IMG/VR virus record: IMGVR_UViG_3300036770_007547
Span: 158,776 to 222,775 of that record
Strand: one strand, 5' to 3'
Length of the DNA: 64,000 nt
The translations under genes were made by a program, and so were the position numbers. Shown one piece after another: positions 35,511 through 64,000 of the stretch (position 1 is its first letter; every line of letters starts with the position of its first letter). The notes beneath the pieces were generated by a model. That model saw only the letters and a program-made list of their open reading frames with translations, did not search any database and had not been told where the DNA came from.

Positions 35511-36840
35511 CATCGAGTATCGCCAACAAATCCTGGACAATATATCCGCCAGCTTTTGTGCAGCCAAATGGTACAACGCCACGATATGGTTGGGATCGGG
35601 CCAGACCACGTCGTGCCATCACCCGCCCGCTCATGCCATAGACATCACAGCCATCCATGACAATCCCAAGGCCTTACATAACACGTCCGCTAAAAAACAA
35701 GACCGCGCTGACATGCAGGCTGGTCGTAGACCCGCTGGTTGCGAGTATTGCTGGAAGATCGAAGACATGGGCAGAGACGCTGTGTCGGATCGTGTATACA
35801 AGAGCCGCATATACCCGATCCAGGCTATATATGATGCAAGCGAGATGGATCCGAATGTGGACGTCGATCTCCGCACGCTGGAGATTGCCTTTGACCGCAC
35901 TTGTCAGCTGGCTTGTTCTTACTGTAATCCTGCTTTTAGCTCTACCTGGGTTAAAGACATCCGGACTCATGGACCATATCTGGCCCTGGAATCTGATGGT
36001 CGAAACCATTTTACTCACGCTCATGATCATGCCCAGTTGTATCGCTTCGGTGAGGATAATCCATATATCAGCGCGTTTTTTCGGTGGTGGGAAACGGACC
36101 TCCACCGCACCTTGGACGAGCTGCGCATCACTGGTGGCGAACCGCTCATGTCGGGATATACATGGCAATTGCTGGAATGGTTCAAGGCGAATCAGGGTCG
36201 TTCCAAGACGCGTCTAGCCATCAACTCAAATCTCAGCATCACACGTCAGCGTCTCCGGGAATTCATTGAAGCCACGCAGTACATAGAAAATCTCGATGTT
36301 TACACCAGCAACGAAAGTGTTGGCGGCCAGGCCGAGTACATACGTGACGGACTTGACTATGATCTCTGGATGCACAATGTACAAGAACTCCTGGAACATC
36401 AACACATCCGCGCAGTACACAGCATGTGTACCATCAATGCACTTTGCTTGGACAGTCTGCCGGAATATCTGGACCAACTGATACAGCTGAAAAAACACTA
36501 CGGACGAGATCGAGTCAATTTCACTCTCAACATACTGAGATTTCCCAGCTTCCAATCACCGTTGGTGTTGCCCGATGACTTGCGAACATGCTATCGTGAT
36601 CGTTTGGTCCAGTTCATGGTCAAACACAAAGGATGTTCGTATCTGCACGAACACGAATGGCGGCATCTGCAACGACTGGTAGACTATCTAGACGTGGTCA
36701 AAACTCCGCACGCTGGCGCACGTGAACGATCGGTGTTGCAAAATGATTTCGCCAAGTTTTATCAACAGTATGATCAGCGACGCGGCAAATGCTTTGTCGA
36801 AACTTTTCCGGGAATGGCCCAATGGTACAGTCAACTATAG
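35503..36840 (+). CDS. N-terminal twitch-domain radical SAM protein
   Basis: CAAKW...SCHHP...CEYCW; CQLACSYC; ITGGEPL. Clear paralogue of 33002-34393. Confidence 0.9.
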   Translation: MNDIEYRQQILDNISASFCAAKWYNATIWLGSGQTTSCHHPPAHAIDITAIHDNPKALHNTSAKKQDRADMQAGRRPAGCEYCWKIEDMGRDAVSDRVYKSRIYPIQAIYDASEMDPNVDVDLRTLEIAFDRTCQLACSYCNPAFSSTWVKDIRTHGPYLALESDGRNHFTHAHDHAQLYRFGEDNPYISAFFRWWETDLHRTLDELRITGGEPLMSGYTWQLLEWFKANQGRSKTRLAINSNLSITRQRLREFIEATQYIENLDVYTSNESVGGQAEYIRDGLDYDLWMHNVQELLEHQHIRAVHSMCTINALCLDSLPEYLDQLIQLKKHYGRDRVNFTLNILRFPSFQSPLVLPDDLRTCYRDRLVQFMVKHKGCSYLHEHEWRHLQRLVDYLDVVKTPHAGARERSVLQNDFAKFYQQYDQRRGKCFVETFPGMAQWYSQL

Positions 36841-42060: not shown

Positions 42061-42158
42061 CATGGTTGAAACGATTGATCGGATGGATCAAACTAGAAAT
42101 ACGTTATCGCAGGAAACTGCGCGAGTTACGCAAACGCGACCCTTTCATTTATAAATGA
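42057..42158 (+). CDS. 33-aa highly basic peptide (MTWLKRLIGWIKLEIRYRRKLRELRKRDPFIYK), not in ORF track
   Basis: ATGA overlap with both neighbours; fills the gap exactly. Confidence 0.7.
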   Translation: MTWLKRLIGWIKLEIRYRRKLRELRKRDPFIYK

Positions 42159-43642
42159 ACATACTAGGAATCAGTGCGGGTTTCCATGACGGTTCAGTGA
42201 GCCTGGTGTCCCCGAACGGCGACATATTGTTTGCTGCCCACAGCGAAAGATACAGCCGTGTCAAAAACGATGATGGTATATCACCAGACATGCTGGCCGA
42301 AATCGACGGTACACAAATTGGCACACTGGCCTTTTACGAACGACCTTGGATGCATGGTTTGCAGCGAGCAGTGAGTGGGCAGACTCCTTTGCCACCCTTG
42401 AGCCTATCAGGCACGTTGTCCCAACATCTCAATGGCTGGTATCTGAAAAATGCCGTGGAAGATCGTAGATGCTTCTCGCATCATCTCAGTCATGCCGCTG
42501 CGGGTTTCCAGACATCACCGTTTGATGACGCCACTGTGGTGGTGATAGATGCCATTGGAGAACTTGACACTGTTTCCATCTATCGTGCCTGTTACGATGA
42601 CCAGGGCCAGGCACAGTATCAACGACTGTGGCGGCAAAGGTATCCACACAGCATTGGATTATTCTACAGTGCCGTGACCAAAGCCGTGGGACTCAAGCCC
42701 ATGGAAGAAGAATATATAACCATGGGCATGGCTGCTTATGGCAGCGATCTCGGTGCCGCCTGGATGCGCGAGCATCTCGTCGAGGATCTACAACAAGTGA
42801 GATTCCACAAGAATCTGCACATTGGATTCGATGAATACGAGTTGCCATTCACCCACAACGAAGATATCGCGGCTTCGGCCCAGGCCCTGACCGAGCAGTT
42901 GATCATGTCAGTGATGCGACGTGCTCGCGATCTCACCGGTGGTGGCAATCTCGTTTACATGGGTGGTGTGGCCTTGAATTGCCTGGCCAATCGTTTGTTG
43001 GGAGACTATTTTGATGACATTTGGATCATGCCCAATCCCGGAGATGCTGGATCGAGTCTTGGTGCAGCCGCTCTTGCTTATGGTCAGCGCCTGCGCTGGC
43101 GTGACCCTTATCTTGGTCACACTATCACTGGCGATTATCCTGTTCGTGCCCTACTCGATGATCTTGCTGACGGGGGTATTGCTGCTGTGGCTAGCGGACC
43201 AGCTGAGTTTGGTCCTCGTGCCCTAGGCAACCGTAGTCTATTAGCAGATCCTCGCGGAGAGGATATCAAGGATAGAGTCAATGAAATTAAGCGACGTCAA
43301 AAATTTAGACCCTTTGCCCCGGTCATACTGGCCGAGATGGTCAATGACTACTTTGATATGCCACCTGTTTGGCACCGCAGCGATTACATGCAAGTGGTCG
43401 CCCGGTGCCGTCGCCCTGATCTTTTTCCTGCTATATGTCATGTTGATGGCACCAGCCGAGTACAGACAGTTCCAAAGAATTCGCGATCGGGCATCCGCCA
43501 ACTCCTAGAACAATGGTATGCCCAGACCGGCTGTCCCATGTTATTGAACACCAGTCTCAATGTGCGCGGGGAACCCATGATCAACACTCGAGACGATGCT
43601 GATAGATTCACTAGATTTTACGGCGTGCCCGTGAGATCATAG
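42155..43642 (+). CDS. Carbamoyltransferase (NodU/CmcH/TobZ family)
   Basis: HDGSV, ERYSRVK, HHLSHAA, DAIGE, GGVALNC, GDAGSSLGAA, EFGPRALGNRS, RPFAP, HVDGTSRVQTV, LLNTSLN. Confidence 0.95.
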   Translation: MNILGISAGFHDGSVSLVSPNGDILFAAHSERYSRVKNDDGISPDMLAEIDGTQIGTLAFYERPWMHGLQRAVSGQTPLPPLSLSGTLSQHLNGWYLKNAVEDRRCFSHHLSHAAAGFQTSPFDDATVVVIDAIGELDTVSIYRACYDDQGQAQYQRLWRQRYPHSIGLFYSAVTKAVGLKPMEEEYITMGMAAYGSDLGAAWMREHLVEDLQQVRFHKNLHIGFDEYELPFTHNEDIAASAQALTEQLIMSVMRRARDLTGGGNLVYMGGVALNCLANRLLGDYFDDIWIMPNPGDAGSSLGAAALAYGQRLRWRDPYLGHTITGDYPVRALLDDLADGGIAAVASGPAEFGPRALGNRSLLADPRGEDIKDRVNEIKRRQKFRPFAPVILAEMVNDYFDMPPVWHRSDYMQVVARCRRPDLFPAICHVDGTSRVQTVPKNSRSGIRQLLEQWYAQTGCPMLLNTSLNVRGEPMINTRDDADRFTRFYGVPVRS

Positions 43643-45840: not shown

Positions 45841-46939
45841 TGAAATCTCGTCGCATTTTTTCCAGCATGCATGAAACTTCGTCCCATAACACACGTTCAA
45901 AGCCGCCACCATAAAAATGTCGATGATTGTGTTCGATCACTGGCAAGCAGCGTTGGTACATGTCGTTGAGTTGTTGATGATCCAGGCTGTCCATCCAACA
46001 CAACAGTTGCGATATCTTTGATAACCTCACAGCATCGTCGACTTCGCTGTCATAGCTTTCGTCCCAGACGTCATGAAAGGTGTGGAATCCATATCTGCGA
46101 AGATATTCGAGACTGCCAGCACAGCTTACCATCACAAACGGCATCTTGAGGCAGATGGGTTTGAATGTTTTTTCAGTGAGATGCTGTCGTGTGCCGCTGA
46201 ACACAGTTTCTGTGATCACGTAGGCTAGACTACTCGCAGTCTCGTGGAATTGTGTGAGACAATAGCTTTTCATGGGATGCCCGGTTTCCCCGGAAAAATT
46301 CCAGGGCAGTTGGGCTTGTCGTACCAGCTCACGTGCCTGGTCCCCGCCCAGGGCATGTGCTAGATCCAGCACAGACTGGCCCTCTACGGGACATTGATCC
46401 GGAAAGCTGATACAGGCATTGTGGACGTTGTGTTCCAACAGTTTCAGCAAAAGTCGCACTCGATGTTCGCGGCGTCCCCCGACTATGCGATTGGCACTGA
46501 AAAAACTGTGAGTTATATCCCGCTTGTTGGGGTCGGTGATCAACCATGTGCGGTCGTAGCCACGGAACCAATCCAAAGCAGCCCATCCGTGGAAAAAATA
46601 ATAGTAGTCTTTGAGGCGGTATCTTTCACACAGTTCACGCACATTGTCGCTTTGGTATTCGCTGTGTATCATGGCTCGATGCCTGGGACCTATCCTGTGA
46701 TTGAGATCACGATTGCGGATCTGTAGATCATCAAACAGCGGAGCATGCATGTCCAAATATATTGGCTCTTGATCGTGAAAGTAAGTATAATTTAGTTCAA
46801 AGCCATTGGCTGCGACCTTGACGAGATTTTCGGGTCGTGAGCTACCAAACGGATCGCAATAAAACATGCGTGTGGCGGGAACATGTTTCTGTATATAGGG
46901 CCAGAACAGGTAATGATAGATTTCATCGATCTTGATCAT
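45833..46939 (-). CDS. GT-B-like (GT10/exostosin-like) putative glycosyltransferase
   Basis: AYVITET...HLTEKTFKP...PF...LRRYGFHTF..VWDESYD. Confidence 0.5.
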   Translation of the reverse strand: MIKIDEIYHYLFWPYIQKHVPATRMFYCDPFGSSRPENLVKVAANGFELNYTYFHDQEPIYLDMHAPLFDDLQIRNRDLNHRIGPRHRAMIHSEYQSDNVRELCERYRLKDYYYFFHGWAALDWFRGYDRTWLITDPNKRDITHSFFSANRIVGGRREHRVRLLLKLLEHNVHNACISFPDQCPVEGQSVLDLAHALGGDQARELVRQAQLPWNFSGETGHPMKSYCLTQFHETASSLAYVITETVFSGTRQHLTEKTFKPICLKMPFVMVSCAGSLEYLRRYGFHTFHDVWDESYDSEVDDAVRLSKISQLLCWMDSLDHQQLNDMYQRCLPVIEHNHRHFYGGGFERVLWDEVSCMLEKMRRDFND

Positions 46940-49593: not shown

Positions 49594-50580
49594 TCACAAT
49601 GCCAGTCGTTGACGCCAGTAATCGCTGTTGATGATCCAGTTGTGATAGATTTGGAATCCTTGGTCAATGTCGACTTTGGGATTGAAATCCAGTAGTTGCT
49701 GTGCTAGAGTGATGTCGAGTCTTCCGCGACTGGGAAAATCCTGATCACGATCGCGCACTTCGATGTCACCACGGCCCACTAGTTTTTGTGCCAGTTGAGC
49801 TGCTTCTAGCAGTGTCCATGCATGACTCTTGGTTATGTTGAAGGTGTGATTGTTGGCTTGATCTCTCAGGCACGCAGCCACGATGCCATCGGCAGCATCA
49901 TCCACGTAGGTAAAATCCAAGCGCTCGTTGGCACCGTTGACGCGTATGGTTTCTCCGCGCATGGCAGTGATCAAGAAACGACTGATCACGCGATCCTCCA
50001 CGTCCAAGGGTCCGTATACTGCACTGGGACGGATCACCACATGCGCCATTCCATACTTGCGGGTGTAATCTCGCACCAACCATTCGCCGGCCAGCTTCAT
50101 GATGCCGTATTGACCTTGTGGACGGCATTCGGCATCTTCGGTCACTGCATCACGGAAGTCGCCATAGACCATGCTGGATGATATGTAAACAAACTTTTTC
50201 ACGCCCGACAGTCTCGCTGCTTCCAAGAGATTCAAAAGACCTTCCATCATGGTACGCGAGCCCAGCGCCGGCGCAGCATTCACCACTTTCTGTCTCGGGA
50301 AACTGGCCATGTGTATCACAGTGTCGGGCTGTTCTTGGCGAAACACATAATCCACATTGTGTGACACAGAGATATCGCCCACATACAATGGTGTATCGGG
50401 TGCGATGCGTTTTTCTCTTTCTTGGAACAGATACTGCATCTCATCTTCGGGTATGATACCGTAGTTGGTTTTGTTGTCCATGACCGTGGTCCAATGTCCC
50501 AGTGCTTGCAGACGATTCACCACATTGTGACCGATGAGACCAAGCCCACCTGTAACTAAGATTTTTCTTGATTGTTCCAT
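49594..50580 (-). CDS. NAD-dependent NDP-sugar epimerase/dehydratase (extended SDR)
   Basis: VTGGLGLIG (GxxGxxG), SSSMVYG, YGIMK (YxxxK), RPSAVYGP, DFTYVDD. Confidence 0.93.
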   Translation of the reverse strand: MEQSRKILVTGGLGLIGHNVVNRLQALGHWTTVMDNKTNYGIIPEDEMQYLFQEREKRIAPDTPLYVGDISVSHNVDYVFRQEQPDTVIHMASFPRQKVVNAAPALGSRTMMEGLLNLLEAARLSGVKKFVYISSSMVYGDFRDAVTEDAECRPQGQYGIMKLAGEWLVRDYTRKYGMAHVVIRPSAVYGPLDVEDRVISRFLITAMRGETIRVNGANERLDFTYVDDAADGIVAACLRDQANNHTFNITKSHAWTLLEAAQLAQKLVGRGDIEVRDRDQDFPSRGRLDITLAQQLLDFNPKVDIDQGFQIYHNWIINSDYWRQRLAL

Positions 50581-50807
50581 CTCAAGTAGTACTCCGTGAC
50601 TTTTCGTGGATCTGAAATTTCGCCTCGTATGGCCACATCATATCCCCAGTAATTTTCATCGGGTTGTGTATGATAGGTGAGATTGTGCGCATGCTCCATG
50701 ACCCATCGTCCTTGCTCGGTCTGTTGCCACTGGTATATGGGTTGTGCCGCATAGATGTCTACATCATCTACATCGCCCAGATTGAAGCGATAGAAAGTGA
50801 TCTTCAC
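50556..50807 (-). CDS. Hypothetical protein
   Basis: 83-aa ORF overlapping both neighbours in the - strand operon. Confidence 0.7.
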   Translation of the reverse strand: MKITFYRFNLGDVDDVDIYAAQPIYQWQQTEQGRWVMEHAHNLTYHTQPDENYWGYDVAIRGEISDPRKVTEYYLRWNNQEKS

Positions 50808-51487
50808 GATTGTACGAAATCAGAAACCATGGGAAAGATACGTGAAATGGCCTCTGCACAGGCCCGAGCCACTTCTTGATGCTCTCGTTGTGTGCCATTG
50901 GCACTCCTGAGCTCGATGAAATGTGCCCATGATCTCAGGGTACCATTCATGTAGATCCTGCTTTCGATCAATCCCTCGGGCAACACGGCACGAGCCTGTT
51001 CCTTGGCGATGCCTTTGGTGATGGCCCATTCGTAGTTGCGTCGAGCCAGTTCGATCACTTCGAGTTGTTTTATGTGCCAGGTCTTGGCCAGCTCTTGCGC
51101 TTCGATATCGGAATCATCGATGCTGATGCTGTTTTGCCGATTCTTTTGATCCTGCATGCGTAGCTCGCGCACTGTGAAATCTAGATCACGTGTGGGGTCG
51201 GCATACCTTTGGCTGAACTCTTGGAACGAGAAACTGCGATGTCTCAGTATCTGCCGTGCGATGTCTCGAGTGGTAGTGATTTCCATGCAGGCCGACACCA
51301 TTTCTAACGGACTCCAATGCTGATGTTTTACCAGGTAGCGTATGAGACGTTCCGAGGTCTCGGTGTTGAACTGATTGGCTGGATTGGAAACACGGGCACA
51401 GTACGCGATGAGTTCTTGTGCATCCGAGATGCCTTGATCTGCAAATTCAGTGCAAGGCTGTGAATAAGAAACCAGGCGTACTTTCAT
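50804..51487 (-). CDS. thyX: FAD-dependent thymidylate synthase
   Basis: AYCARVSNP, HWSPLE, RHRSFSFQEFSQRY (ThyX motif RHRx7SxR), EQARAVLP, QREH. Confidence 0.96.
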   Translation of the reverse strand: MKVRLVSYSQPCTEFADQGISDAQELIAYCARVSNPANQFNTETSERLIRYLVKHQHWSPLEMVSACMEITTTRDIARQILRHRSFSFQEFSQRYADPTRDLDFTVRELRMQDQKNRQNSISIDDSDIEAQELAKTWHIKQLEVIELARRNYEWAITKGIAKEQARAVLPEGLIESRIYMNGTLRSWAHFIELRSANGTQREHQEVARACAEAISRIFPMVSDFVQS

Positions 51488-51789
51488 GCAATACCTTTGA
51501 GTAGTTTGTCGGTTTCGGGTTGCAAAATACCGGCCACAGTCTCGATGTCCAGCACGAACTCCATGCTCACGATGTCTTCCTCATTGGACCGTATGAACGT
51601 GTTGACCATTTGCTCGATGACATCTTCATCAAAGCCCTGTTCTCGGAGACGCTTTAGATTGATGGTTCGTTGGCGCCGTTCGCGTGTACGGAACACCACC
51701 TTTTTCACACAATCTATCGGTACATGCTGCTTGTCGACTTGGTCAACTATGGATTCCCAATTTTTTAGGAAGTCGTTAGTGAGCAGCAT
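51484..51789 (-). CDS. Hypothetical protein
   Basis: Likely start ATG 51789 (MLLTNDF); ATGA-coupled to thyX. Confidence 0.65.
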   Translation of the reverse strand: MLLTNDFLKNWESIVDQVDKQHVPIDCVKKVVFRTRERRQRTINLKRLREQGFDEDVIEQMVNTFIRSNEEDIVSMEFVLDIETVAGILQPETDKLLKGIA

Positions 51790-56906: not shown

Positions 56907-56939
56907 GTTGGATATTTATTGGTTGATGACATGGTCATG

Positions 56940-56964
56940 AAAAAGCCCGCCGAAGCGGGCTTTT
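56940..56964 (-). terminator. Intrinsic terminator downstream of tmRNA (possibly bidirectional)
   Basis: - strand AAAAGCCCGC-TTCG-GCGGGCTTTTT. Confidence 0.9.
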
Positions 56965-57278
56965 GGTGGGTTTGATAACAAGGCCTGTCCTGCCCCGTCT
57001 AGCCTTAGGCGGCTAGAGCAAACACCTCATCGTTGGCATTTGTAGGTTTCGCTTCTACGGCCGGGAAATCCCAACCCTAAGGGCTTCTGCCTTGCCCCGC
57101 TGTCCACTCTGCTACTCCTTGCACTGTCGAAACTATTTCGGGCCCATCAGAAGCATACTAGCAACACCGACCATAAAGGTTCTCTTTACGATGTTTACAG
57201 TCTAATATGCTTCTGGTGGACCCGGCCGGTACCGCCCCGGCGTCCAGAACACATTTTGCATCGCTTCATACAGCGATA
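56965..57278 (-). ncRNA. ssrA: Circularly permuted (two-piece) tmRNA; tag ANDEVFALAA*
   Basis: - strand order: acceptor piece ending GCCGG-GGCGGTA-CCGGC-CGGGTCC-A-CCA (57214), 68-nt intervening segment with 12-bp stem, then coding piece starting GGGCCCGAAATAGTTTCGAC (57145). G3:U70 pair; tag ORF 57037-57005. Outer ends approximate. Confidence 0.92.
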
Positions 57279-57285
57279 ATACTAT

Positions 57286-58293
57286 TTACTTGATCTGTGA
57301 CCAAACTTTTTGACGAATATCATCCTGCAGTTTTGTGGGAAGATGCACATAGTCGAGTTCAGCACTCAGCTTGGCACCGTTCTTGAAAGCCCAATCAAAG
57401 AACTTGATGACTTCTTGGCTTTCTTTCTTGTTCACAGGTTCTTTGTACATAAGGATGAAGCTGGCAGTGGTGATGGGCCATGAGTCTTTGCCGGGTTGAT
57501 TGACAATGCTGAGTCCCATACCAGGAACTGAGAACCAATCGGCACCTGCTGCGGCCGCTGCGAATGTAGCATCATCAGGCCGGACGAACTTGCCATCTTT
57601 GTTCTGAAGTTGGAAGTAAGGGATGCTGTTCTTCTTAGCATAGGCATATTCTACATAACCGATGCTACCTTTGATACGACCAACATTTGCTGCCACGCCT
57701 TCATTGCCCTTACCGCCAACAGACGACGCTGCGGGCCACTTGACAGCAGCACCTTTGCCTACCTTTTCAGCCCAGAGCTTTGAAGCTTCGGTGAGGTAAT
57801 CGGTAAAGTTGAAGGTTGTGCCTGAACCGTCTGCACGATGGACTACTGTGATATTGAGATCGGGCAGTTTCTTGCCAGGGTTCAGTGCAGCGATCTTGGG
57901 ATCGTTCCAGTTAACGATCCAGCCCATGAACATCTCTGCCAGCACTTCGCCAGTTACTTTGAGTTCACCCTGCTTAAAACCATCAAGGTTGAACACGGGC
58001 ACAGTGCCGCCAATGATCGCGGGGAACTGCACCATGCCATCCTTGTCTAAGTCTACACCTTTGACGGGTGCATCGCTGGCACCAAATGTAACTGTCTTGG
58101 CACGGATCTGACGCAGGCCGCCACTTGAACCAATACTCTGATAGTTGAGGCTGACACCGGTTTCTTTCTTGTAGGCTTCAGCCCACTTGGCGTATACAGG
58201 ATAGGGAAATGTTGCGCCTGCACCTGTGATAGTCTGTGCTTGCGCTGATACAACAAATAGTGCCGCCAGCATGGAAATTACAAATTGTTTCAC
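57286..58293 (-). CDS. pstS: Phosphate ABC transporter substrate-binding protein
   Basis: GTG start 58293 with AAGGAG RBS; signal peptide; ITGAGATFPYP, YQSIGSSGG, FGASD, RADGSGTT, GKGNEGV, GYVEYAY. Confidence 0.96.
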   Translation of the reverse strand: MKQFVISMLAALFVVSAQAQTITGAGATFPYPVYAKWAEAYKKETGVSLNYQSIGSSGGLRQIRAKTVTFGASDAPVKGVDLDKDGMVQFPAIIGGTVPVFNLDGFKQGELKVTGEVLAEMFMGWIVNWNDPKIAALNPGKKLPDLNITVVHRADGSGTTFNFTDYLTEASKLWAEKVGKGAAVKWPAASSVGGKGNEGVAANVGRIKGSIGYVEYAYAKKNSIPYFQLQNKDGKFVRPDDATFAAAAAGADWFSVPGMGLSIVNQPGKDSWPITTASFILMYKEPVNKKESQEVIKFFDWAFKNGAKLSAELDYVHLPTKLQDDIRQKVWSQIK

Positions 58294-58329
58294 TGTGGTC
58301 TCCTTGTGAGTGTGATAGTGATTGTGTGC

Positions 58330-58378
58330 TTTATACACCAACCTATTTAATTACGTTGATATTACAATCTTGTTACAA
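58330..58378 (-). promoter_or_regulatory. Putative Pho box array plus -10 element upstream of pstS
   Basis: - strand TTGTAAC-N4-TTGTAAT-N4-ACGTAAT (11-nt period, 58378-58350), then TATAAA at 58335-58330. Confidence 0.65.
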
Positions 58379-58384: not shown

Positions 58385-58558
58385 TCAATGCGGTATCTGT
58401 CGGGGAAGATAGGGCACTGACCTAGGACCGTGTAATTGTTGCAGTAGCAGTCGAGCCTCTTCTGCGGTCTCGGCTGCCACTCTGGCCTTGGTCTCGATGC
58501 TGCCAGGACCGGGAGGTCGGATCACGGCCTCCCACAATCGTAACTTAGAACTGGACAT
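58385..58558 (-). CDS. Small hypothetical protein
   Basis: Likely start ATG 58558 (MSSSKLRLWEA); 57 aa. Confidence 0.55.
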   Translation of the reverse strand: MSSSKLRLWEAVIRPPGPGSIETKARVAAETAEEARLLLQQLHGPRSVPYLPRQIPH

Positions 58559-58940
58559 TGAACCTGCGACCGCGATATTCAAAGGTCACTGTCTCACCTA
58601 TTTGTTGGGTGATGGGCACGGAACGGCAGACCTGGCGTTGTTCGTACCCGGCTTGATCTTGACCGATGCGACTGCCCACGCTGGCTCCCACCACTGCACC
58701 CAGCACCGTGGCCACATCCTTGCCGGTGCCCTTGCCCACCTGGTTGCCCACGATGCCACCAGTGACACCACCGATCACGGTGCCCACACCCGAGTTGTCT
58801 ACTCGAACTTGTTCGATGTGGCACTGTTGTTGCAACGTGGTGGTATAACGCGGTTGGATGTCAACCACCCGAGCCACATCGTCTGCGGCTAAAGCTGTTG
58901 TTGATGCCAGAGTGGCCAAACACAAAAACAATTTTTTCAT
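58545..58940 (-). CDS. Secreted glycine-zipper 2TM domain protein
   Basis: MKKLFLCLA signal peptide; GTVIGGVTGGIVGNQVGKGTGKDVATVLGAVVGASVG; AAAGGA RBS. Confidence 0.85.
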   Translation of the reverse strand: MKKLFLCLATLASTTALAADDVARVVDIQPRYTTTLQQQCHIEQVRVDNSGVGTVIGGVTGGIVGNQVGKGTGKDVATVLGAVVGASVGSRIGQDQAGYEQRQVCRSVPITQQIGETVTFEYRGRRFNVQF

Positions 58941-59072: not shown

Positions 59073-59330
59073 TTACTTATCTTGGTTTTCGCGCAGATGC
59101 GGCGGTTTTTCACGGCGATCTATGTTGGGATTTTTCAACAGATAGTCGCGACCAACTTTGTGTTCCTCGATCTCGCGCAGAGCTGTGACCACGGGTCCCG
59201 TGGCCTCCGCCACTTGTGGCAACCATCCCGAGTTCAACTCACGTGCTCGCCGGGCACCGATCAAGATCAGATCATATCTACTGCCCACGGCTGCGACTGC
59301 TGCTTCGCTGGTGATGCCTTTGGTCATCAT
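59073..59330 (-). CDS. rpoZ: RNA polymerase omega subunit homologue
   Basis: SRYDLILIGARRAREL and PVVTALREIEEHKV match the omega pattern; AGGAG RBS. Confidence 0.85.
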   Translation of the reverse strand: MMTKGITSEAAVAAVGSRYDLILIGARRARELNSGWLPQVAEATGPVVTALREIEEHKVGRDYLLKNPNIDRREKPPHLRENQDK

Positions 59331-59348
59331 GGTCTCCTATAAAACTAC

Positions 59349-59377
59349 AGTATACACTTGAGAGTGTTAGATGTCAA
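59349..59377 (-). promoter_or_regulatory. Sigma70-like promoter for rpoZ
   Basis: TTGACA(59377-59372)-N17-TATACT(59354-59349). Confidence 0.85.
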
Positions 59378-60114
59378 CACTGGATGCCCAGTCTGGAAAG
59401 ATATTCCAGGATCTGATCCACTATCAAGGCTTTGCCGGTGGCATCGGGATGATATCCATTTTCGGTGTTGTATCCGGATTTTGTGGCAAAATCATGCAGT
59501 CCCGGACCCGGGGTCAATTCCAACATGCGGTCTTCGCGACCTTGCAGCAATTTCTGGAATCTCGTGTCATCGAGGTCGTGGTGTTCGGTGAGCATGAACG
59601 CATAAACATAGCCGCGATTTTCTAGATAGTTGAACAAAAAGTCCAGTGCCGAATATCCAAGTCCGGGCACAATGTCCAGCCCCACTTGCCGTTCTATGGC
59701 TCGGTGCTGGCGACTTTCACGATGTAGGTATGTGTGTGCGCACAGATCATGGTTCCAGGGCACCCTGGGACTCGCGGCTGGATTGTCAAATTCGCAGGGC
59801 ACATCCAGTCGCATGGCGATGCTGATGTTGAACATTATCAGAGTGTTGTGCCTGGGATACTGGTAACGCTCCAGCACCGATCTCAAGGATTCGGCGATCA
59901 AGATGTTGCCGTGACTGGCTGCAGCCATGTTCACCAAACTCTGCACATGCAACCGTTGCGCCAACATTCCGGCCCAACTGGCCGGCTGAGACACCGATCC
60001 CTGCCCTTGATCGATGAACGAACATCCGCCCATGCTGTTGCTCGTGGGTGGACACCCGCCCACACCATCTTGTGTAAAGCTGTTGCCTCCGATCAAGAGA
60101 TTTTCGATGCGCAT
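59374..60114 (-). CDS. SGNH/GDSL-like hydrolase
   Basis: Likely start ATG 60114 (MRIENL). IGGNSFT (block I-like), NMAAASHGN, C-terminal NGYHP (block V-like). Confidence 0.55.
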   Translation of the reverse strand: MRIENLLIGGNSFTQDGVGGCPPTSNSMGGCSFIDQGQGSVSQPASWAGMLAQRLHVQSLVNMAAASHGNILIAESLRSVLERYQYPRHNTLIMFNISIAMRLDVPCEFDNPAASPRVPWNHDLCAHTYLHRESRQHRAIERQVGLDIVPGLGYSALDFLFNYLENRGYVYAFMLTEHHDLDDTRFQKLLQGREDRMLELTPGPGLHDFATKSGYNTENGYHPDATGKALIVDQILEYLSRLGIQC

Positions 60115-60142
60115 GCGATTAGTTATCGCAGATAAATACTTG

Positions 60143-60868
60143 ATGCTTGAATTGCTGGTGGTACTCGTGAGTACCCATATAACAATAGCATCAGTCACCA
60201 TCTATCTGCATCGTTGCCAAGCCCATAGATCAGTAGAATTGCATCCCATCGTGAGCCATTTCATGCGATTCTGGCTGTGGCTCACGACTGGCATGGTGAC
60301 CCGAGAGTGGGTGGCCATACATCGCAAACATCATCAGGCCTGCGAAACCGCGCAAGATCCACACAGCCCACAAGTGCATGGCATCCTCAAGGTGCTGTTT
60401 GCTGGTGCTTGGTTGTATGCCGACGCTACCAAAAATCGCCGGATGATCGAGCAGTACGGACGAGGCACACCCGACGACTGGATCGAGCGCAATGTCTACA
60501 GCCGGCACAGCAGCCTCGGCTTCCTGTTGCTGTTGATCGTGGAAGTGGCCCTGTTCCACGGTTGGGGTCTGGTAATGTGGCTGGTTCAGATGTTCTGGAT
60601 TCCGTTCTGGGCCGCAGGTGTCATCAACGGATTGGGACACTGGTGGGGCTATCGCAACACTGACACCCGAGATTGCAGTCGCAACATCTTTCCCTGGGGC
60701 ATCATTGTGGGCGGCGAGGAATTACACAACAATCATCACGATGCACCGGCATCGGCTCGACTCAGTCAGAAATGGTGGGAGTTTGACATCGGCTATTTGT
60801 ACATACAGATCTTGAGCCGTGCCGGACTGGCACGGATACGTGTGATAGATCAACCCGTGGTGCCGTAA
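60143..60868 (+). CDS. Membrane fatty-acid (delta-9-like) desaturase
   Basis: Three His boxes (HRCQAH, HRKHH, HNNHH); EFDIG; hydrophobic segments. Confidence 0.92.
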   Translation: MLELLVVLVSTHITIASVTIYLHRCQAHRSVELHPIVSHFMRFWLWLTTGMVTREWVAIHRKHHQACETAQDPHSPQVHGILKVLFAGAWLYADATKNRRMIEQYGRGTPDDWIERNVYSRHSSLGFLLLLIVEVALFHGWGLVMWLVQMFWIPFWAAGVINGLGHWWGYRNTDTRDCSRNIFPWGIIVGGEELHNNHHDAPASARLSQKWWEFDIGYLYIQILSRAGLARIRVIDQPVVP

Positions 60869-61323
60869 CGACCTATGCGGTCCGCGGCATACGAAGCCGC
60901 GAATGCCTGGGGCTTGACAAAGGGTACCACGTTGCAAACTCCTCGAATATAACCGATGGCCTGGGAGATCACGCAGCTAGAACCAGCCAGCTCGGAAGGA
61001 TTGATGTCGAGATGTACCTGTATGTCTCGATCCAGTATACGAGGCGCCAGTGCCAAGTACATTTCACTCACACGATACACTTCGTTCATGAGTCTCATGC
61101 TGGGTCGATCGGCCCGCTGATCGAAATCGCGTTCGCGAGTGATGTCTCCAAATATGCGGCAACCACGACAGCCATCGATGTGAACCACCACAGCCACTGT
61201 GTATTCGGCCCACCATTCTCGTCTTATTTTGAAGCGCACGCTGTCGGCACCGAGATAGATGCGTGTGTTCGGTCCCGTGGAATTGATGTAATCAACGACT
61301 TGATCTAGGTCAATGCGTGCCAT
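60850..61323 (-). CDS. YkuK-like ribonuclease H-fold protein
   Basis: Likely start ATG 61323 with AAGGAG RBS. IYLGADS, RLMNEV, VHLDIN, KPQAFAASYAAD. Confidence 0.75.
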   Translation of the reverse strand: MARIDLDQVVDYINSTGPNTRIYLGADSVRFKIRREWWAEYTVAVVVHIDGCRGCRIFGDITRERDFDQRADRPSMRLMNEVYRVSEMYLALAPRILDRDIQVHLDINPSELAGSSCVISQAIGYIRGVCNVVPFVKPQAFAASYAADRIGRYGTTG

Positions 61324-61368
61324 ATCTTCTCCTTTGATATTTATAACCGGCATTGTTGCATTTGTATG

Positions 61369-61449
61369 TGGTGCCCCTGCTCGGATTCGAACCGAGAACT
61401 TCACCACTCCTTTTGAGAGAGCTGCCTTTACCAATTTGGCCACAGGGGC
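61369..61449 (-). tRNA. trnL: tRNA-Leu(CAA)
   Basis: GCCCCTG/CAGGGGC acceptor, CT-CAA-AA loop, TTCGAAT, encoded CCA. Confidence 0.88.
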
Positions 61450-61470
61450 GGGAATCAATTAAATATTTCC

Positions 61471-62358
61471 ATGAACAAGCTAACGATGGATCGCACCATG
61501 GTAGATGTGTACATCACCAACGTGTGCAATCTTACCTGTGAGGACTGCCGGAGTTTCAACAACTACCGGTTCAAAGGACACATCCAGTACGATCATGCCG
61601 TGCACCAGGCCTGGGCCTCGCGCTTGGATATTCCTGATTTTGGTGTGCTGGGTGGGGAACCCTGTCTCCATCCCGATCTATTTGATTGGTTACATGGACT
61701 GCGTGAATGCTGGCCGCGATCTCGGGGACTATTGATCACCAACGGTACACACATGTCCCGGGTCAAGAATCTCCATGAAACCTTGGCCGAGCTTGATTAC
61801 GAAGTTCAGATATCTATACACAGTCCTCGCATGCGGGGATTCGTGGCCGATCAGATTCTCCAAACTTTCGGCATCTGTGAAGTGGTACCGCCACGCATCG
61901 ACGACGACTGGAAACACAACACAAATTTTTATCTCATGTCTAGCCTAGGTGTCAAACTAGAGATACAGAACACCTGGAACTTTCAAACATCACCATTTGC
62001 TGGTCCGGGATTCCAGTTGCATCGCAGCGACCCATATCGAGCTCATGCCAATTGCAACATAAAACACTGCACGCATTTTATTGCAGGGAAATTTTACAAA
62101 TGTGCCGTGGTGGGCTTGATGCCTGAATTTTTGAAACAACAAGGAAAACCCGTGCCAGAAATCCTGGAATCCTACCAGCCGTTGACATTGGAAAATCTCA
62201 GTCAGGCCAAGCTGGATGAGCTGCTTGATCCCATACCACAATGCCAGGTTTGTCCGGAAAACTATACCAAACAACACATCATGGCCGATTTCAAACAACC
62301 ACAGATACTAAAACGCTACGAAAAGTATCAACCGTCGCTTTCCTGCCAGCAACCATGA
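61471..62358 (+). CDS. Radical SAM protein with C-terminal Cys-rich domain
   Basis: CNLTCEDC, LGGEPCL, ITNGT; C-terminal C..HCTH...YKC...CQVC. Confidence 0.88.
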   Translation: MNKLTMDRTMVDVYITNVCNLTCEDCRSFNNYRFKGHIQYDHAVHQAWASRLDIPDFGVLGGEPCLHPDLFDWLHGLRECWPRSRGLLITNGTHMSRVKNLHETLAELDYEVQISIHSPRMRGFVADQILQTFGICEVVPPRIDDDWKHNTNFYLMSSLGVKLEIQNTWNFQTSPFAGPGFQLHRSDPYRAHANCNIKHCTHFIAGKFYKCAVVGLMPEFLKQQGKPVPEILESYQPLTLENLSQAKLDELLDPIPQCQVCPENYTKQHIMADFKQPQILKRYEKYQPSLSCQQP

Positions 62359-62789
62359 GGGAATGATTCTATCATCCATGAAGCTAAAGGTGTAACAAAT
62401 TTGAATCGCAATTCACCATCCCACCCTATGTCTCGACTGGGAAATGCTGTGTCTACTGGACCAAACCCATTGTTGTCATGATGGAATCGAGCACGATAGC
62501 GTATCAATGGCCATATGTTGATGTCGTTGAATTTCAGCTCTTCGATGTGATATGACTGATTCACGACTAGATCTGCTGCCTCGGGGCTTGGTTGATCATC
62601 TATGTGAAGGCGTTTACCGCTGAGCGCCAACGCGAAGTCGTGTGTTTGGCGTTGGTCGCTGTGTTCCCAATCCACCACATGCAATTGATGTGTCACAGGC
62701 GAACTCAAAATCTCGACACCGTTGATGTTCAGACAAAATTTGCTGGGAATACAGGTCTTGAACTTTATGCTGATTTTGATTTTATTCAC
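62328..62789 (-). CDS. Hypothetical protein
   Basis: 153 aa, GTG start; TAAATA 4 nt upstream. Confidence 0.6.
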   Translation of the reverse strand: MNKIKISIKFKTCIPSKFCLNINGVEILSSPVTHQLHVVDWEHSDQRQTHDFALALSGKRLHIDDQPSPEAADLVVNQSYHIEELKFNDINIWPLIRYRARFHHDNNGFGPVDTAFPSRDIGWDGELRFKFVTPLASWMIESFPHGCWQESDG

Positions 62790-62883
62790 GCGATATTTAT
62801 AAAGTCATGTGCTACACAGGTTGGAACTTACAGAAGAAATCGTCGAGTGACCCATCGGTGCAGGACAGGTATCGACGATATCG

Positions 62884-62957
62884 TGGTCTCGGTGGGAGGA
62901 ATCGAACCTCCGCCACATGCTCCCAAAGCACGCATGATACCATTTCACCACACCGAG
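62884..62957 (-). tRNA. trnP: tRNA-Pro(TGG)
   Basis: CTCGGTG/CACCGAG acceptor, TT-TGG-GA loop, TTCGATT, CCA. Confidence 0.9.
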
Positions 62958-63016
62958 TCTCGGGGCCGGGGATCGAAGATTTGAGCTTCGGGCTCACTTG
63001 GCAAATCCCCAATGAT

Positions 63017-63105
63017 TGGAGGAGGGATGGTAGAATCGAACTCCAACCGCTCTCGCAGTCCATCTGTTTTCAAGACAGTGCTGGGCCCAGCCCAGATAAC
63101 CCTCC
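63017..63105 (-). tRNA. trnS: Atypical tRNA-Ser(TGA)
   Basis: CT-TGA-AA loop, long variable arm, TTCGATT, CCA. Folds best with an 8-nt acceptor strand, 6-bp D-stem, 4-bp T-stem with one bulge and U73. Confidence 0.75.
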
Positions 63106-63217
63106 AGTGATTGACCGGTTACCGGATCCGGTTCGGGCTTTTGGTCCCCGAGGCTCGTAAACTCACCCACCCTTGATGTCGTGCCTGCGCAGAGGACCGG
63201 CCGGGCATCGCCGTGTG

Positions 63218-63292
63218 TGGTGCTGATGAGAGGAATCGAACCTCCGACTTACGCCTTACCAAGGCGTTACTCTACCCCTGAGTTACATCAGC
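63218..63292 (-). tRNA. trnT: tRNA-Thr(GGT)
   Basis: GCTGATG/CATCAGC acceptor, TT-GGT-AA loop, CCA. Confidence 0.93.
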
Positions 63293-63401
63293 TGGGATCA
63301 GTCGCACCAGGTCTCATAGGCATTGACCAACATCACGCATTCTAGGACTTCGCCGGTGACGATCAGTGCCAAAGCAGACAAGGCCAGTGCTGCAAGATAT
63401 A

Positions 63402-63479
63402 TGGTGGCAGTGGAGGGATTCGAGCCCCCGATCTTCCGCGTATGAAGCGGCTGCATTGGACCAGCTATGCTACACTGCC
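63402..63479 (-). tRNA. trnM: tRNA-Met(CAT), elongator-type (Ile2 not excluded)
   Basis: GGCAGTG/CACTGCC acceptor, TT-CAT-AC loop, CTCGAAT T-loop, CCA. Confidence 0.85.
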
Positions 63480-63558
63480 TGGATTGATTTGTGTTCATCA
63501 TGTATTATATGACACTAGCATGGAAATGTGTTTGCACTTTCATACATGAGCTTATTAC

Positions 63559-63633
63559 TGGCCCGACCGGCAGGAATCGAACCCGCATCGTACGCTTTAG
63601 AAGAGCGTTGCCTTTCCGTTAGACTACGGTCGG
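63559..63633 (-). tRNA. trnR: tRNA-Arg(TCT)
   Basis: CCGACCG/CGGTCGG acceptor, CT-TCT-AA loop, CCA. Confidence 0.9.
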
Positions 63634-63642
63634 TAATTGTAT

Positions 63643-63717
63643 TGGTGGGTGCGGGGAGTTTCGAAATCCCGACTCTCTGGTTAAAAGCCAGATACTCTTC
63701 CTCTGAGTTACGCACCC
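63643..63717 (-). tRNA. trnK: tRNA-Lys(TTT)
   Basis: GGGTGCG/CGCACCC acceptor, CT-TTT-AA loop, CCA. Confidence 0.9.
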
Positions 63718-63723
63718 CGGATT

Positions 63724-63799
63724 TGGTAGCCACAGCTGGGTTCGAACCAGCGACCACCGCGTTATCAACACGGTGCTCTACCTGCTGAGCTATGTGGCT
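63724..63799 (-). tRNA. trnI: tRNA-Ile(GAT)
   Basis: AGCCACA/TGTGGCT acceptor, TT-GAT-AA loop, TTCGAAC, CCA. Confidence 0.92.
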
Positions 63800-63802: not shown

Positions 63803-64000
63803 TCACATGGTAGGGCCGTTGCCGTTGCGAAAACCTACCTCACCTCCTTCGGCTTCGATCCTCTTTATCACATCTTCAAAAAGAATGGGCGCGAAATTGG
63901 GAGTTTGTTCTACACACACGCAATGGTAACGGACATCGATCTTATCGCCGTAGGCGATTTCTCCGGTCTTGGTCACACCACGAGCTCGCATCACACGATT
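63803..64000 (-). CDS. C-terminal fragment, possibly of a calcineurin-like phosphoesterase (truncated by the window edge)
   Basis: DVRYHCVCVEQTPNFAPILFE resembles C-termini of phage metallophosphoesterases as I recall them; no catalytic motifs fall inside the window. Confidence 0.45.
   Translation of the reverse strand, partial: NRVMRARGVTKTGEIAYGDKIDVRYHCVCVEQTPNFAPILFEDVIKRIEAEGGEVGFRNGNGPTM

What the first reader, a model, noticed from the sequence alone, without database searches (positions are those of the whole stretch)
59073..59377. Phage-encoded RNA polymerase omega homologue under a strong sigma70 promoter
Seen: an 85-aa omega-like ORF with TTGACA-N17-TATACT and an AGGAG RBS. Known: omega chaperones beta-prime and forms ppGpp site 1 in proteobacterial RNAP. 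Inference: swapping host omega could make RNAP insensitive to the stringent response or favour the phage late sigma, which fits with the tmRNA, tRNA and pstS starvation toolkit.
Basis: partly seen in the sequence, partly recalled or inferred. Interest (0 to 1): 0.6.

Follow-up and report, generated by a model that had tools for sequence, protein, structure and literature searches.

The report
Jumbo-phage copy of RNA polymerase omega
An uncultured ~350-kb jumbo phage, like many of its relatives, carries its own conserved copy of omega, the smallest subunit of bacterial RNA polymerase, behind a near-perfect host-type promoter; I found no report of this in cultured phages or in the papers searched, and it offers a new way to study what omega does.

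Summary
Window 59073-59330 (-) encodes an 85-aa (more likely 84-aa) protein that passes Pfam RNA_pol_Rpb6 and the NCBI rpoZ equivalog model. It folds like solved omega chains and is predicted to dock on the canonical omega site of E. coli beta' (score 0.77, best control 0.00). TTGACA-N17-TATACT and AGGAG lie directly upstream.

The contig is a real jumbo myovirus, a fragment estimated 64% complete; related genomes are 351-355 kb. Its nearest cultured relatives are the CBB/Rak2-like phages.

The gene is not a stray host fragment. 46 of 48 non-redundant viral-contig omegas form one clade apart from 65 bacterial omegas. Close pairs show dN/dS of 0.0-0.2. Two complete 353-355 kb phage genomes carry it. 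None of five related phage records showed beta, beta' or a sigma-70 region 2 domain.

The ppGpp-blinding idea is only weakly supported. Nearly all close relatives keep the N-terminal MAR motif. Only this copy has MMTKG/MTKG there, and it still has a basic residue. No late sigma was found.

Best reading: an early-expressed phage omega that loads onto host core RNA polymerase. What that achieves (assembly, processivity, sigma-70 preference or altered ppGpp site 1) is inferred, not shown. I found no report of a phage-encoded omega.

The parts
59073..59330 (-). omega (rpoZ-like) coding sequence, 85 aa from the first ATG; the second ATG at 59327 is the likelier start (84 aa); stop TAA at 59075-59073
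   Evidence: SD spacing compared with relatives
59372..59377 (-). -35 hexamer TTGACA; it overlaps the stop codon of the upstream gene (59374-60201)
59349..59354 (-). -10 hexamer TATACT, 17 nt after the -35
59334..59338 (-). Shine-Dalgarno AGGAG
   Evidence: conserved GGA(G) at 5-8 nt in relatives
58545..58940 (-). downstream gene: glycine-zipper (Rick_17kDa_Anti) lipoprotein-like protein, probably co-transcribed with omega because no terminator lies between them
57286..58341 (-). pstS, phosphate-binding protein, next gene downstream on the same strand (the real start is probably internal to this ORF)
   Evidence: NF008171, 399.5 bits
56914..57328 (-). permuted (two-piece) betaproteobacterial-type tmRNA, tag ANDEVFALAA; a clue to the host
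   Evidence: RF01850, 116 bits; RF04321, 123.5 bits

Best explanation
The gene encodes a real omega subunit that belongs to the phage, not to a host fragment.

Shown:
- It has omega sequence and omega fold.
- It belongs to a phage-specific omega clade under purifying selection, present in complete ~354-kb jumbo phage genomes.
- Those genomes show no beta or beta' of their own.
- It has its own near-consensus sigma-70 promoter, one of a class of such promoters in these genomes.

Inferred:
- The unmodified host sigma-70 holoenzyme transcribes it early in infection, probably together with the downstream lipoprotein gene and pstS.
- The protein then occupies the canonical omega site on host beta' (regions around residues 362-488, 613-619, 905-912 and the C-terminal tail in E. 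coli numbering).
- This keeps the host core enzyme, on which the phage depends entirely, loaded with omega, either by supplementing or by gradually replacing host omega.

The most likely pay-off is what omega is known or proposed to do in cells: help beta' fold and the core assemble, stabilise elongating RNA polymerase against termination, and favour the housekeeping sigma. All of these would suit a 350-kb genome with many consensus sigma-70 promoters, very long genes and a slow-growing subsurface host.

In this copy the altered N-terminus may also change ppGpp site 1. That would be a lineage-specific extra, not the reason the clade keeps omega.
For: Identity. AF2 model pLDDT 76, with all top 50 Foldseek PDB hits being omega chains at TM 0.62-0.66 by the model's length and 0.62-0.77 by the target's over the first 27 hits (the E. 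coli, Vibrio and Xanthomonas chains), falling to about 0.5 for the mycobacterial and clostridial omega chains ranked lower.

Predicted docking on E. coli beta' 340-940 plus 1130-1407: ipSAE 0.77 in three runs, best of 3 controls 0.00, runs agree in at least 88% of contacts, partner pLDDT at least 75. In the tool's calibration this mark was reached by 51 of 78 solved complexes and 2 of 108 mismatched pairs. The interface is the canonical omega site.

Phage origin.

Clade: 46 of 48 non-redundant viral-contig omegas lie on one side of a branch, away from 65 bacterial omegas (SH-aLRT 91; 0 of 500 label shuffles as clustered). The best cellular match in 301 sampled genomes of the class is 47% identity and 38.9 bits. 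Metagenomic relatives score about 100-114 bits.

Selection: dN/dS is 0.00-0.19 in the ten pairs with dS 0.11-0.44. Omega is about 64% identical between G000 and G004, while the median over 86 shared ORFs is 43%.

Complete genomes with one omega each: G004 (354,680 bp) and G005 (353,233 bp); also a 351,563-bp contig.

No beta, beta' or Sigma70_r2 in five records.

Promoter class and its conservation upstream of omega. No terminator after omega.

Known omega roles: ppGpp site 1 (PMC7676912); stabilising elongating RNAP and processivity (preprint PMC13192885).
Against: - No experiment and no RNA data: no RNA run holds the region. Expression, timing and binding are all inferred.
- The docking pass may reflect the model's memory of solved RNAP structures, and it used E. 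coli beta', not the unknown host's.
- Cells already make omega, and E. coli rpoZ deletions are viable, so the benefit of an extra copy is not obvious.
- Prevalence in the lineage is unknown. Only 2 of 12 UvsX-selected larger fragments showed omega.
- The cultured relatives (CBB/Rak2-like phages, 93 records) lack it, so it is dispensable for this type of phage.
- Residues at the predicted contacts are barely more conserved than the others (0.70 vs 0.66).
Confidence: 0.55

Rival explanations
1. One reading: the phage omega replaces host omega in order to remove or weaken ppGpp site 1, so that RNA polymerase ignores the stringent response.
For: - This copy alone has MMTKG/MTKG in place of MAR. 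Omega residues 2-5 coordinate the ppGpp phosphates (PMC7676912).
- The N-terminus is the most variable part of the conserved half in the phage clade: 16 of 46 non-redundant sequences depart from MAR, in about 9 separate lineages by my reading of the tree, against 1 of 65 bacterial sequences.
- Some omega-bearing relatives carry small SpoT-like HD_4 hydrolase genes within a few kb (L009, L060/L061, L063). MazG is present in G004, G005 and G307. These phages may therefore manipulate alarmones.
- The stringent response can restrict phages (PMC13483052 abstract).
Against: - 110 of the 120 nearest homologues and 30 of 46 non-redundant clade members keep MAR. The clade is therefore not kept for site-1 loss.
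- This copy still has a small residue followed by a basic one (T-K after Met removal from the likelier start).
- The model places the N-terminus in the site-1 pocket.
[quoted passage not shown] Site 2, at DksA and the beta' secondary-channel rim, would be unaffected.
- No HD_4 or MazG gene was found in this (incomplete) record.
Confidence: 0.17
2. The phage omega is a marked subunit. Its phage-specific surface or tail recruits a phage regulator to the polymerase, or blocks a host one. In this subclade the tail carries a conserved motif, roughly P-x-N-I/L-D-R-R-E-K/R-P-P.
For: - The tail residues D71, R72, E74 and P76 are at least 90% conserved in 53 aligned sequences. This holds even though the tail is modelled with low confidence (pLDDT 48-57), lies outside the predicted beta' interface, and is absent from the short Burkholderiales-type omegas.
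- There are clade-wide substitutions relative to bacterial omegas, such as TS(E/Q) for TVED and RAREL for RARQ(I/L/M).
- Precedent: the RcGTA activator GafA works by binding omega directly (PMC9638019).
Against: - No candidate partner was identified.
- The tail differs between subclades: lysine-rich tails in G004-like phages, none in some others.
- This rests on conservation alone.
Confidence: 0.13
3. The omega-like protein is a subunit of an unrecognised, very divergent phage-encoded multisubunit RNA polymerase, analogous to RPB6 homologues in large eukaryotic viruses.
For: Some jumbo phages (phiKZ-like, AR9) encode multisubunit polymerases that are hard to detect by sequence (my own knowledge).
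Against: - No match to RNA_pol_Rpb1_2 or RNA_pol_Rpb2_6 in two complete and three partial genomes. The one hit was 12.7 bits, below the cut-off.
- The protein is 38-41% identical to E. coli and Vibrio omega and is predicted to fit E. coli beta'.
- The genomes are full of host-type sigma-70 promoters.
- The known phage multisubunit polymerases lack omega (my own knowledge).
Confidence: 0.03
4. The gene is a passenger: host DNA picked up recently, or a chimeric assembly, with no function for the phage.
For: It lies in an accessory region rich in host-like genes (tmRNA, pstS, desaturase, lipoprotein). Cultured relatives lack it.
Against: - The phage omegas form a clade well separated from cellular omegas.
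- Selection is purifying.
- The gene has its own conserved promoter.
- It occurs in independent assemblies from many samples, including complete genomes.
- GC is uniform.
- None of 62 viral loci has the gmk-rpoZ-spoT host context.
Confidence: 0.03

Closest known systems
Cellular RNA polymerase omega (RpoZ; Pfam PF01192, TIGR00690), especially the short 66-67-aa omegas of Burkholderiales
   Same: Same family by HMM and same fold. The conserved core motifs are kept (G-N/S-R-F/Y-D-L, R-A-R, V-T-A-L-R-E-I-E-E). The gap pattern matches Comamonadaceae/Burkholderiales-type omegas. It is predicted to use the same beta' site.
   Different: It is encoded by a virus, outside the gmk-rpoZ-spoT context, and has its own consensus promoter. 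It is at most 47% identical to any of 301 sampled cellular genomes. It belongs to a separate clade. The N-terminus is variable; here it is MMTKG rather than MAR. The subclade has its own conserved C-terminal tail.
Phage-encoded sigma factors that replace a host RNAP accessory subunit on the host core (T4 gp55, SPO1 gp28/gp33-34; my own knowledge)
   Same: A phage homologue of a dissociable host RNAP component, used on the host core enzyme.
   Different: Sigma gives promoter specificity, and omega does not. No phage omega has been described in the papers I could search.
Non-homologous phage proteins that bind or modify host RNAP (T7 Gp2, T4 AsiA/Alt/ModA, Xp10 P7, Thermus phage gp39; e.g. PMC3950348 and PMC6624301, seen)
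   Same: An early phage product that acts on host RNA polymerase.
   Different: Those proteins are inhibitors or appropriators unrelated to RNAP subunits. This one is a true subunit homologue, expected to fit the normal subunit site.
GafA-omega control of the Rhodobacter gene transfer agent (PMC9638019)
   Same: A phage-derived element whose transcription depends on omega, showing that omega can act as a regulatory docking surface.
   Different: There, host omega is bound by an element-encoded activator. Here the virus encodes the omega itself.
RPB6/omega homologues of large eukaryotic DNA viruses (my own knowledge; not tested here)
   Same: A virus-encoded member of the RPB6/omega superfamily.
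   Different: Those viruses encode the whole polymerase. These phages show no beta or beta'.

Membership tests
RNA polymerase omega (RpoZ / RNA_pol_Rpb6) | Sequence match to the family models above their curated cut-offs | tested here: met
   PF01192: 41.5 bits against a cut-off of 26. TIGR00690 equivalog: 39.7 bits against 23.6. All 21 PDB sequence matches are omega chains.
RNA polymerase omega (RpoZ / RNA_pol_Rpb6) | Omega fold (helical bundle, as in solved RNAP structures) | tested here: met
   AF2 model mean pLDDT 76.4 with helices at 8-15, 18-33 and 46-55. The top 50 Foldseek PDB hits are all omega chains; TM by target length is 0.62-0.77 over the first 27 hits and falls to about 0.5 for the lowest-ranked mycobacterial chains.
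RNA polymerase omega (RpoZ / RNA_pol_Rpb6) | Binds beta' at the canonical site (conserved regions D and G and the C-terminal tail) | tested here: inconclusive
   In silico only: ipSAE 0.77 against a best control of 0.00, with contacts at beta' 362-364, 417-418, 438, 474-488, 613-619, 905-912 and 1360-1368. The tool warns that a pass for a family with solved complexes may come from memory. No biochemistry was possible.
RNA polymerase omega (RpoZ / RNA_pol_Rpb6) | Usual proteobacterial gene context gmk-rpoZ-spoT | tested here: not met
   In the window omega lies between a DUF6071-like gene and a glycine-zipper lipoprotein gene. None of 62 viral loci has gmk or a full-length spoT nearby. This context marks host copies; it does not define the protein family.
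Proteobacterial omega that contributes to ppGpp site 1 | N-terminal M-A-R-(V/I)-T; residues 2-5 coordinate the ppGpp phosphates (PMC7676912) | tested here: not met
   The window copy starts MMTKGITS, or MTKGITS from the second ATG. MAR is present in 64 of 65 bacterial omegas, 30 of 46 non-redundant viral-contig omegas and 110 of the 120 nearest homologues. ppGpp binding itself cannot be tested here.
Early genes of T4-like or jumbo myoviruses driven by host sigma-70 | Near-consensus -35/-10 promoter directly upstream, belonging to a genome-wide class | tested here: met
   An 11/12 site lies 18 nt before the ATG. There are 21 such sites in G000 (shuffles 1-3) and 61 in G004 (shuffles 11-17), including a 12/12 site 21 nt before the G004 omega. 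Early timing itself was not tested.

The most novel reading that the evidence does not exclude
A widespread lineage of environmental jumbo phages re-equips host RNA polymerase with a virus-tuned omega. The conserved core holds it on beta'. The lineage-specific N-termini (here MTKG instead of MAR) retune or abolish ppGpp site 1, and the lineage-specific tails recruit phage factors. Omega would then be a previously unrecognised point of viral control over bacterial transcription, acting together with the alarmone hydrolases (SpoT-like HD, MazG) found in some members.
Probability: 0.25. Interest if true: 0.8.

Novelty: new variant of a known kind. Interest (0 to 1): 0.62.

Why it matters
Omega is the least understood subunit of bacterial RNA polymerase. 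It is dispensable in the laboratory, and its role is still debated: assembly chaperone, ppGpp site, sigma competition or, most recently, elongation stability.

A virus that depends wholly on the host enzyme yet keeps its own omega under purifying selection, behind a consensus promoter, across a large and diverse phage lineage, is independent evidence that omega occupancy or omega identity limits transcription under some natural conditions.

The phage clade also provides a ready-made series of natural variants for testing what omega does: MAR kept or lost, and different tails. For phage biology it adds a core RNAP subunit to the list of host machinery copied by jumbo phages, alongside tRNAs, tmRNA and translation factors. 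It also points to a host-takeover route not seen in cultured phages.

Tried and rejected
- Host contamination or a prophage flank at a tmRNA site. Rejected: GC is uniform, virion and replication genes run along the record, no gmk/spoT context exists, and the same neighbourhood genes (Metallophos, RNaseH_like) recur beside omega in other viral contigs.
- Omega matches in the cultured-phage collection. All six are 39.7% identical over the same 59 residues, and the two annotated ones sit in Salmonella chromosome records. They look like host contamination, not phage omegas.
- The 55% match in a 'Polynucleobacter' MAG. It sits on a 1.8-kb contig and clusters inside the phage clade. The MAG's real omega is 38% identical. 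This is probably a mis-binned phage fragment.
- A phage multisubunit RNAP, a sigma factor or DksA/TraR. None was found. PHROG scans of 30 proteins found no sigma; this is a limited sample.
- A SpoT-like hydrolase or MazG in this record. None was found, but the record is only 64% complete.
- An intrinsic terminator or special RNA structure after omega. None: fold z-score -0.12.
- Expression evidence. No RNA run holds the region.
- Contact residues more conserved than the rest. Not clearly (0.70 vs 0.66).
- Prevalence in the lineage. A UvsX-based sample returned mostly fragments, so no rate can be given.
- The careful tree search did not finish in time. The quick IQ-TREE tree is what I report.
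- 'Moraphages' (PMC12619734) are a different, Bacteroidota-infecting lineage, and that paper does not mention omega.

Full report
**1. What is in the sequence**

On the minus strand an ORF runs from 59330 to 59073. It is 85 aa long, starts ATG-ATG and ends TAA. Directly upstream lie TTGACA (59377-59372), a 17-nt spacer, TATACT (59354-59349) and AGGAG (59338-59334).

AGGAG sits 3 nt before the first ATG and 6 nt before the second. Relatives have the GGA(G) core 5-8 nt before their start. The second ATG (59327) is therefore the likelier start, giving 84 aa that begin MTKG.

No terminator-like hairpin or unusually stable structure follows the stop codon. The promoter probably also serves the downstream glycine-zipper lipoprotein gene (58940-58545) and pstS.

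**2. It is an omega**

- The protein passes Pfam RNA_pol_Rpb6 (41.5 bits, cut-off 26).
- It passes the NCBI equivalog model TIGR00690 rpoZ (39.7 bits, cut-off 23.6).
- All 21 sequence matches in the PDB are omega chains. Residues 6-65 align to E. coli omega residues 4-65.
- An AlphaFold2 model built on 53 homologues has mean pLDDT 76. Its 50 best Foldseek PDB matches are all omega chains, at 23-45% identity (38-41% to the E. coli and Vibrio chains).

**3. It belongs to a phage**

The window is the last 64 kb of a 222,775-bp IMG/VR virus record from a subsurface metagenome. CheckV estimates it 64% complete.

The record carries a T4-type baseplate wedge (phrog_10646, E 1.6e-285), a baseplate hub, virion proteins, prohead proteases, head-closure protein, UvsX, UvsY, dNMP kinase and a 4986-aa ORF whose G004 homologue is 31% identical over 1,800 residues. 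GC is flat at 0.48-0.54 through the omega region.

The closest cultured phages by the wedge protein, at 34-37% identity, are the ~350-kb CBB/Rak2-like jumbo myoviruses (Pectobacterium CBB, Yersinia fHe-Yen9-04, Serratia BF, Erwinia pEa_SNUABM phages, Xanthomonas XaC1) and Sinorhizobium phage Phosso.

The permuted betaproteobacterial-type tmRNA next door (RF01850, 116 bits; tag ANDEVFALAA) points to a betaproteobacterial host.

**4. It is one of many phage omegas**

- A scan of IMG/VR found 62 viral loci with a relative at 34-71% identity.
- The 5.8-billion-protein search found 266 clusters. The best are 60-81% identical and lie mostly on short metagenomic contigs, but also on contigs of 347,675 and 351,563 bp.
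- Two records that CheckV rates 100% and 99% complete, G004 (354,680 bp) and G005 (353,233 bp), each carry one omega.
- G000 shares 86 of 234 crudely called ORFs with G004, in syntenic blocks, at a median 43% identity. Omega is about 64% identical between them.
- Many loci share neighbours with the window. A 202-aa Metallophos gene is 64-89% identical (49% in one locus) over the 42-64 residues that align, because the window's copy is cut by the contig end. An RNaseH_like gene (PF04308) is another shared neighbour.
- No locus has gmk or a full-length spoT beside omega.

**5. The phage omegas are a clade of their own, under constraint**

In 301 genomes sampled across the class that holds both Burkholderiales and Gammaproteobacteria, the best match is 47% identical at 38.9 bits. 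That sample included one unpublished genome, G044. It contributes only to the tally, and no sequence from it was used.

A quick maximum-likelihood tree placed 46 of the 48 viral-contig sequences on one side of a branch from all 65 bacterial ones (SH-aLRT 91; 0 of 500 label shuffles as clustered). The tree used 48 viral and 65 bacterial non-redundant omegas over 90 columns, and the careful search did not finish. The window groups with L002-L004 (support 98). L062/L063 fall on the bacterial side on a long branch and may be a separate acquisition.

The gap pattern of the phage proteins matches the short Burkholderiales-type omegas. Some phage copies reach 61% identity to such an omega. This fits an old capture from that kind of host, but the tree does not resolve a donor.

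Nei-Gojobori estimates for the ten pairs with dS 0.11-0.44 give dN/dS of 0.00-0.19. The window against its nearest relatives is saturated at synonymous sites.

**6. Expression signals are conserved too**

Within 70 nt upstream of omega, 11 of 47 non-redundant viral loci have a match of at least 10/12 to TTGACA-N16-18-TATAAT. Four of these are perfect. Only 3 of 2000 random 70-mers of this genome score that well.

Such sites form a genome-wide class. G000 has 21 with at least 11/12 (shuffles 1-3), 19 of them on the minus strand, which carries most of the called genes. G004 has 61 (shuffles 11-17), many of them perfect and clustered in regions of small ORFs. One is a 12/12 site 21 nt before the G004 omega.

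By analogy with T4 early promoters (my own knowledge), this marks omega as a gene read by the unmodified host sigma-70 holoenzyme, hence probably early. No RNA data exist to test this.

**7. Which polymerase does it serve?**

- No RNA_pol_Rpb1_2, RNA_pol_Rpb2_6 or Sigma70_r2 domain was found in G000, the two complete genomes or two further relatives.
- No DksA/TraR domain was found either.
- The partner must therefore be host beta'.
- A complex prediction used E. coli beta' residues 340-940 and 1130-1407. It gave ipSAE 0.77 in three runs, against 0.00 for the best of three controls. The runs agree in at least 88% of contacts, and partner pLDDT is at least 75.
- In the tool's calibration this mark was reached by 51 of 78 solved complexes and 2 of 108 mismatched pairs.
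- The contacts are beta' 362-364, 417-418, 438, 474-488, 613-619, 905-912 and 1360-1368. On omega they are residues 3, 5-12, 17-33 (in part), 44-51 and 64.
- That is the canonical omega site and includes the beta' residues of ppGpp site 1 (R362, R417, K615, I619; PMC7676912).
- The tool's caveat applies: for a family with many solved complexes a pass shows likeness, not proof that this copy binds.

**8. The ppGpp question**

Residues 2-5 of E. coli omega help coordinate ppGpp at site 1 (PMC7676912).

| Set | Sequences starting MAR | Source |
|---|---|---|
| Bacterial omegas | 64 of 65 | |
| Nearest metagenomic homologues of the window's protein | 110 of 120 | |
| Non-redundant viral-contig omegas | 30 of 46 | |

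The window's MMTKG/MTKG is unique among them. Other phage sublineages show MPRQ, MT(Q/S)RL, MKGR, MTLAL and longer variants. By my reading of the tree that makes about nine separate departures from MAR.

Two conclusions follow:
- The clade as a whole is not kept in order to destroy site 1.
- The N-terminus is far less constrained in phages than in bacteria, and this particular copy may bind ppGpp differently.

After Met removal from the likelier start, the N-terminus would be T-K-G-I-T, against A-R-V-T in E. coli. A small and then a basic residue are kept, but a glycine is inserted. The sequence alone cannot settle the effect.

In passing, small SpoT-like HD_4 genes lie a few kb from omega in L009, L060/L061 and L063. 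MazG is present in G004, G005 and G307. Neither was found in this incomplete record.

**9. Best explanation and its rivals**

Most likely (0.55): an early phage omega that loads onto host core RNAP and secures the functions omega has in cells. These are beta' folding and core assembly, stability of elongating RNAP against termination (preprint PMC13192885), and preference for the housekeeping sigma (a traditional view named in that abstract).

This fits a 350-kb genome that has no polymerase of its own, dozens of consensus sigma-70 promoters, very long genes and a probably slow-growing subsurface host.

Rivals:
- ppGpp blinding as the selected function (0.17).
- A marked subunit whose conserved tail recruits a phage factor (0.13). 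D71, R72, E74 and P76 are at least 90% conserved in 53 sequences although they lie outside the predicted interface. GafA-omega is a precedent.
- A subunit of a hidden phage polymerase (0.03).
- A functionless passenger gene (0.03).

**10. Novelty**

IMG's pipeline already labels some of these proteins 'DNA-directed RNA polymerase subunit omega'. Five full-text searches and three papers that I searched or read in outline gave no description of a phage-encoded omega.

The 50,697-record cultured-phage collection holds only six matches, and all look like enterobacterial rpoZ contamination.

I file it as a new variant of a known kind: a real omega, but virus-encoded, forming its own clade, with its own promoter, a variable N-terminus and lineage-specific tails.

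**Limits**

Everything about expression, binding and function is inferred. The host is unknown. The tree rests on 90 columns. Prevalence in the lineage is not established: omega was seen in 2 of 12 UvsX-selected larger fragments. Read laying was not used because no RNA run holds the region.

Noticed in passing
window 56914-57328 (-): Phage-encoded two-piece (permuted) tmRNA of the betaproteobacterial type (RF01850 116 bits; RF04321 123.5 bits; tag ANDEVFALAA). It overlaps the 5' end of the longest pstS ORF, so the real pstS start is probably further in. It is a good clue to the host.
   Followed up: partly
window 57286-58341 (-): Full-length pstS (NF008171 equivalog, 399.5 bits, cut-off 339) with a signal-peptide-like N-terminus. 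It does not appear in the gene list returned for the source contig, although the ORF is intact.
   Followed up: partly
window 61369-63799 (-): Seven tRNA genes (Leu-CAA, Pro-TGG, Thr-GGT, Met-CAT, Arg-TCT, Lys-TTT, Ile-GAT). tRNA-Leu overlaps the 5' end of the longest ORF of the RNaseH_like gene.
   Followed up: no
window 63803-63994 (-), cut by the contig end: A fragment of a ~202-aa calcineurin-like phosphoesterase (Metallophos). The aligned 42-64 residues are mostly 64-89% identical to genes lying within a few kb of omega, on the same strand, in most related viral loci. This is a conserved companion of omega with unknown role.
   Followed up: partly
L009:8494-9084, L060:10597-11109, L061:6633-7145, L063:1996-2490 (possibly L030:7115-7561; weak at G005:C1:135490-135711): Small stand-alone SpoT-like HD_4 domain proteins (148-196 aa), candidate small alarmone hydrolases, lie 2-5 kb from omega in some related phages. 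Because rpoZ and spoT share an operon in bacteria, omega and the HD domain may have been captured together.
   Followed up: partly
G004:C1:87754-87909; G005:C1:217454-217660 and 163568-163717; G307:C1:140016-140228 and 45943-46167: MazG-domain genes occur in the complete omega-bearing relatives. None was found in this 64%-complete record.
   Followed up: no
L171:9071-13772 (351,563-bp contig); also L172, L173: Directly downstream of omega, a close relative carries porin, OmpA, CsgF, CsgG and FecR-like genes, a cluster of outer-membrane and secretion proteins unusual for a phage. There is also a faint Phage_T7_kinase hit at the locus end.
   Followed up: no
whole record G000 and G004: A class of near-consensus sigma-70 promoters: 21 sites with at least 11/12 in G000 (shuffles 1-3) and 61 in G004 (shuffles 11-17), many of them perfect TTGACA-N17-TATAAT, nearly all on the same strand as the nearest called gene and often 20-50 nt upstream of an ORF.
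   Followed up: partly
window 10413-25373 (+): A single 4986-aa ORF directly after the baseplate wedge gene. Its homologue in G004 is 31% identical over 1800 residues. It is probably a giant tail or baseplate-associated protein.
   Followed up: no
window 32960-38528 (+), 42155-43642 (+), 61471-62358 (+): Several radical-SAM-like proteins and a Nol-like carbamoyltransferase (phrog_1601, E 5e-91). Thy1, sugar epimerase and aminotransferase genes lie at about window 49600-51500. Together these suggest a sizeable modification or biosynthesis cluster.
   Followed up: no
window 60014-60868 (+) and 60850-61458 (-): A fatty-acid desaturase gene lies on the opposite strand, and an RNaseH_like (PF04308) gene sits nearby. 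In L024, L032 and L046 the RNaseH_like gene lies immediately upstream of omega at 52-55% identity.
   Followed up: partly
L064 (CALKUJ010000329.1, 1.8 kb, in a 'Polynucleobacter' MAG): This contig carries a phage-clade omega, while the MAG's own omega is on another contig (38% identical). It is probably a phage fragment mis-binned into the MAG.
   Followed up: partly
phage collection records OR845831.1, OR851528.1, MG065691.1, MG065686.1: Records filed as phages (two of 1.6-1.7 kb, plus Campylobacter phages A11a and A18a) contain an omega match that covers the same query residues at the same identity (39.7%) as the annotated rpoZ genes of two Salmonella chromosome records filed in the same collection. 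This looks like host DNA or contamination in those records.
   Followed up: no
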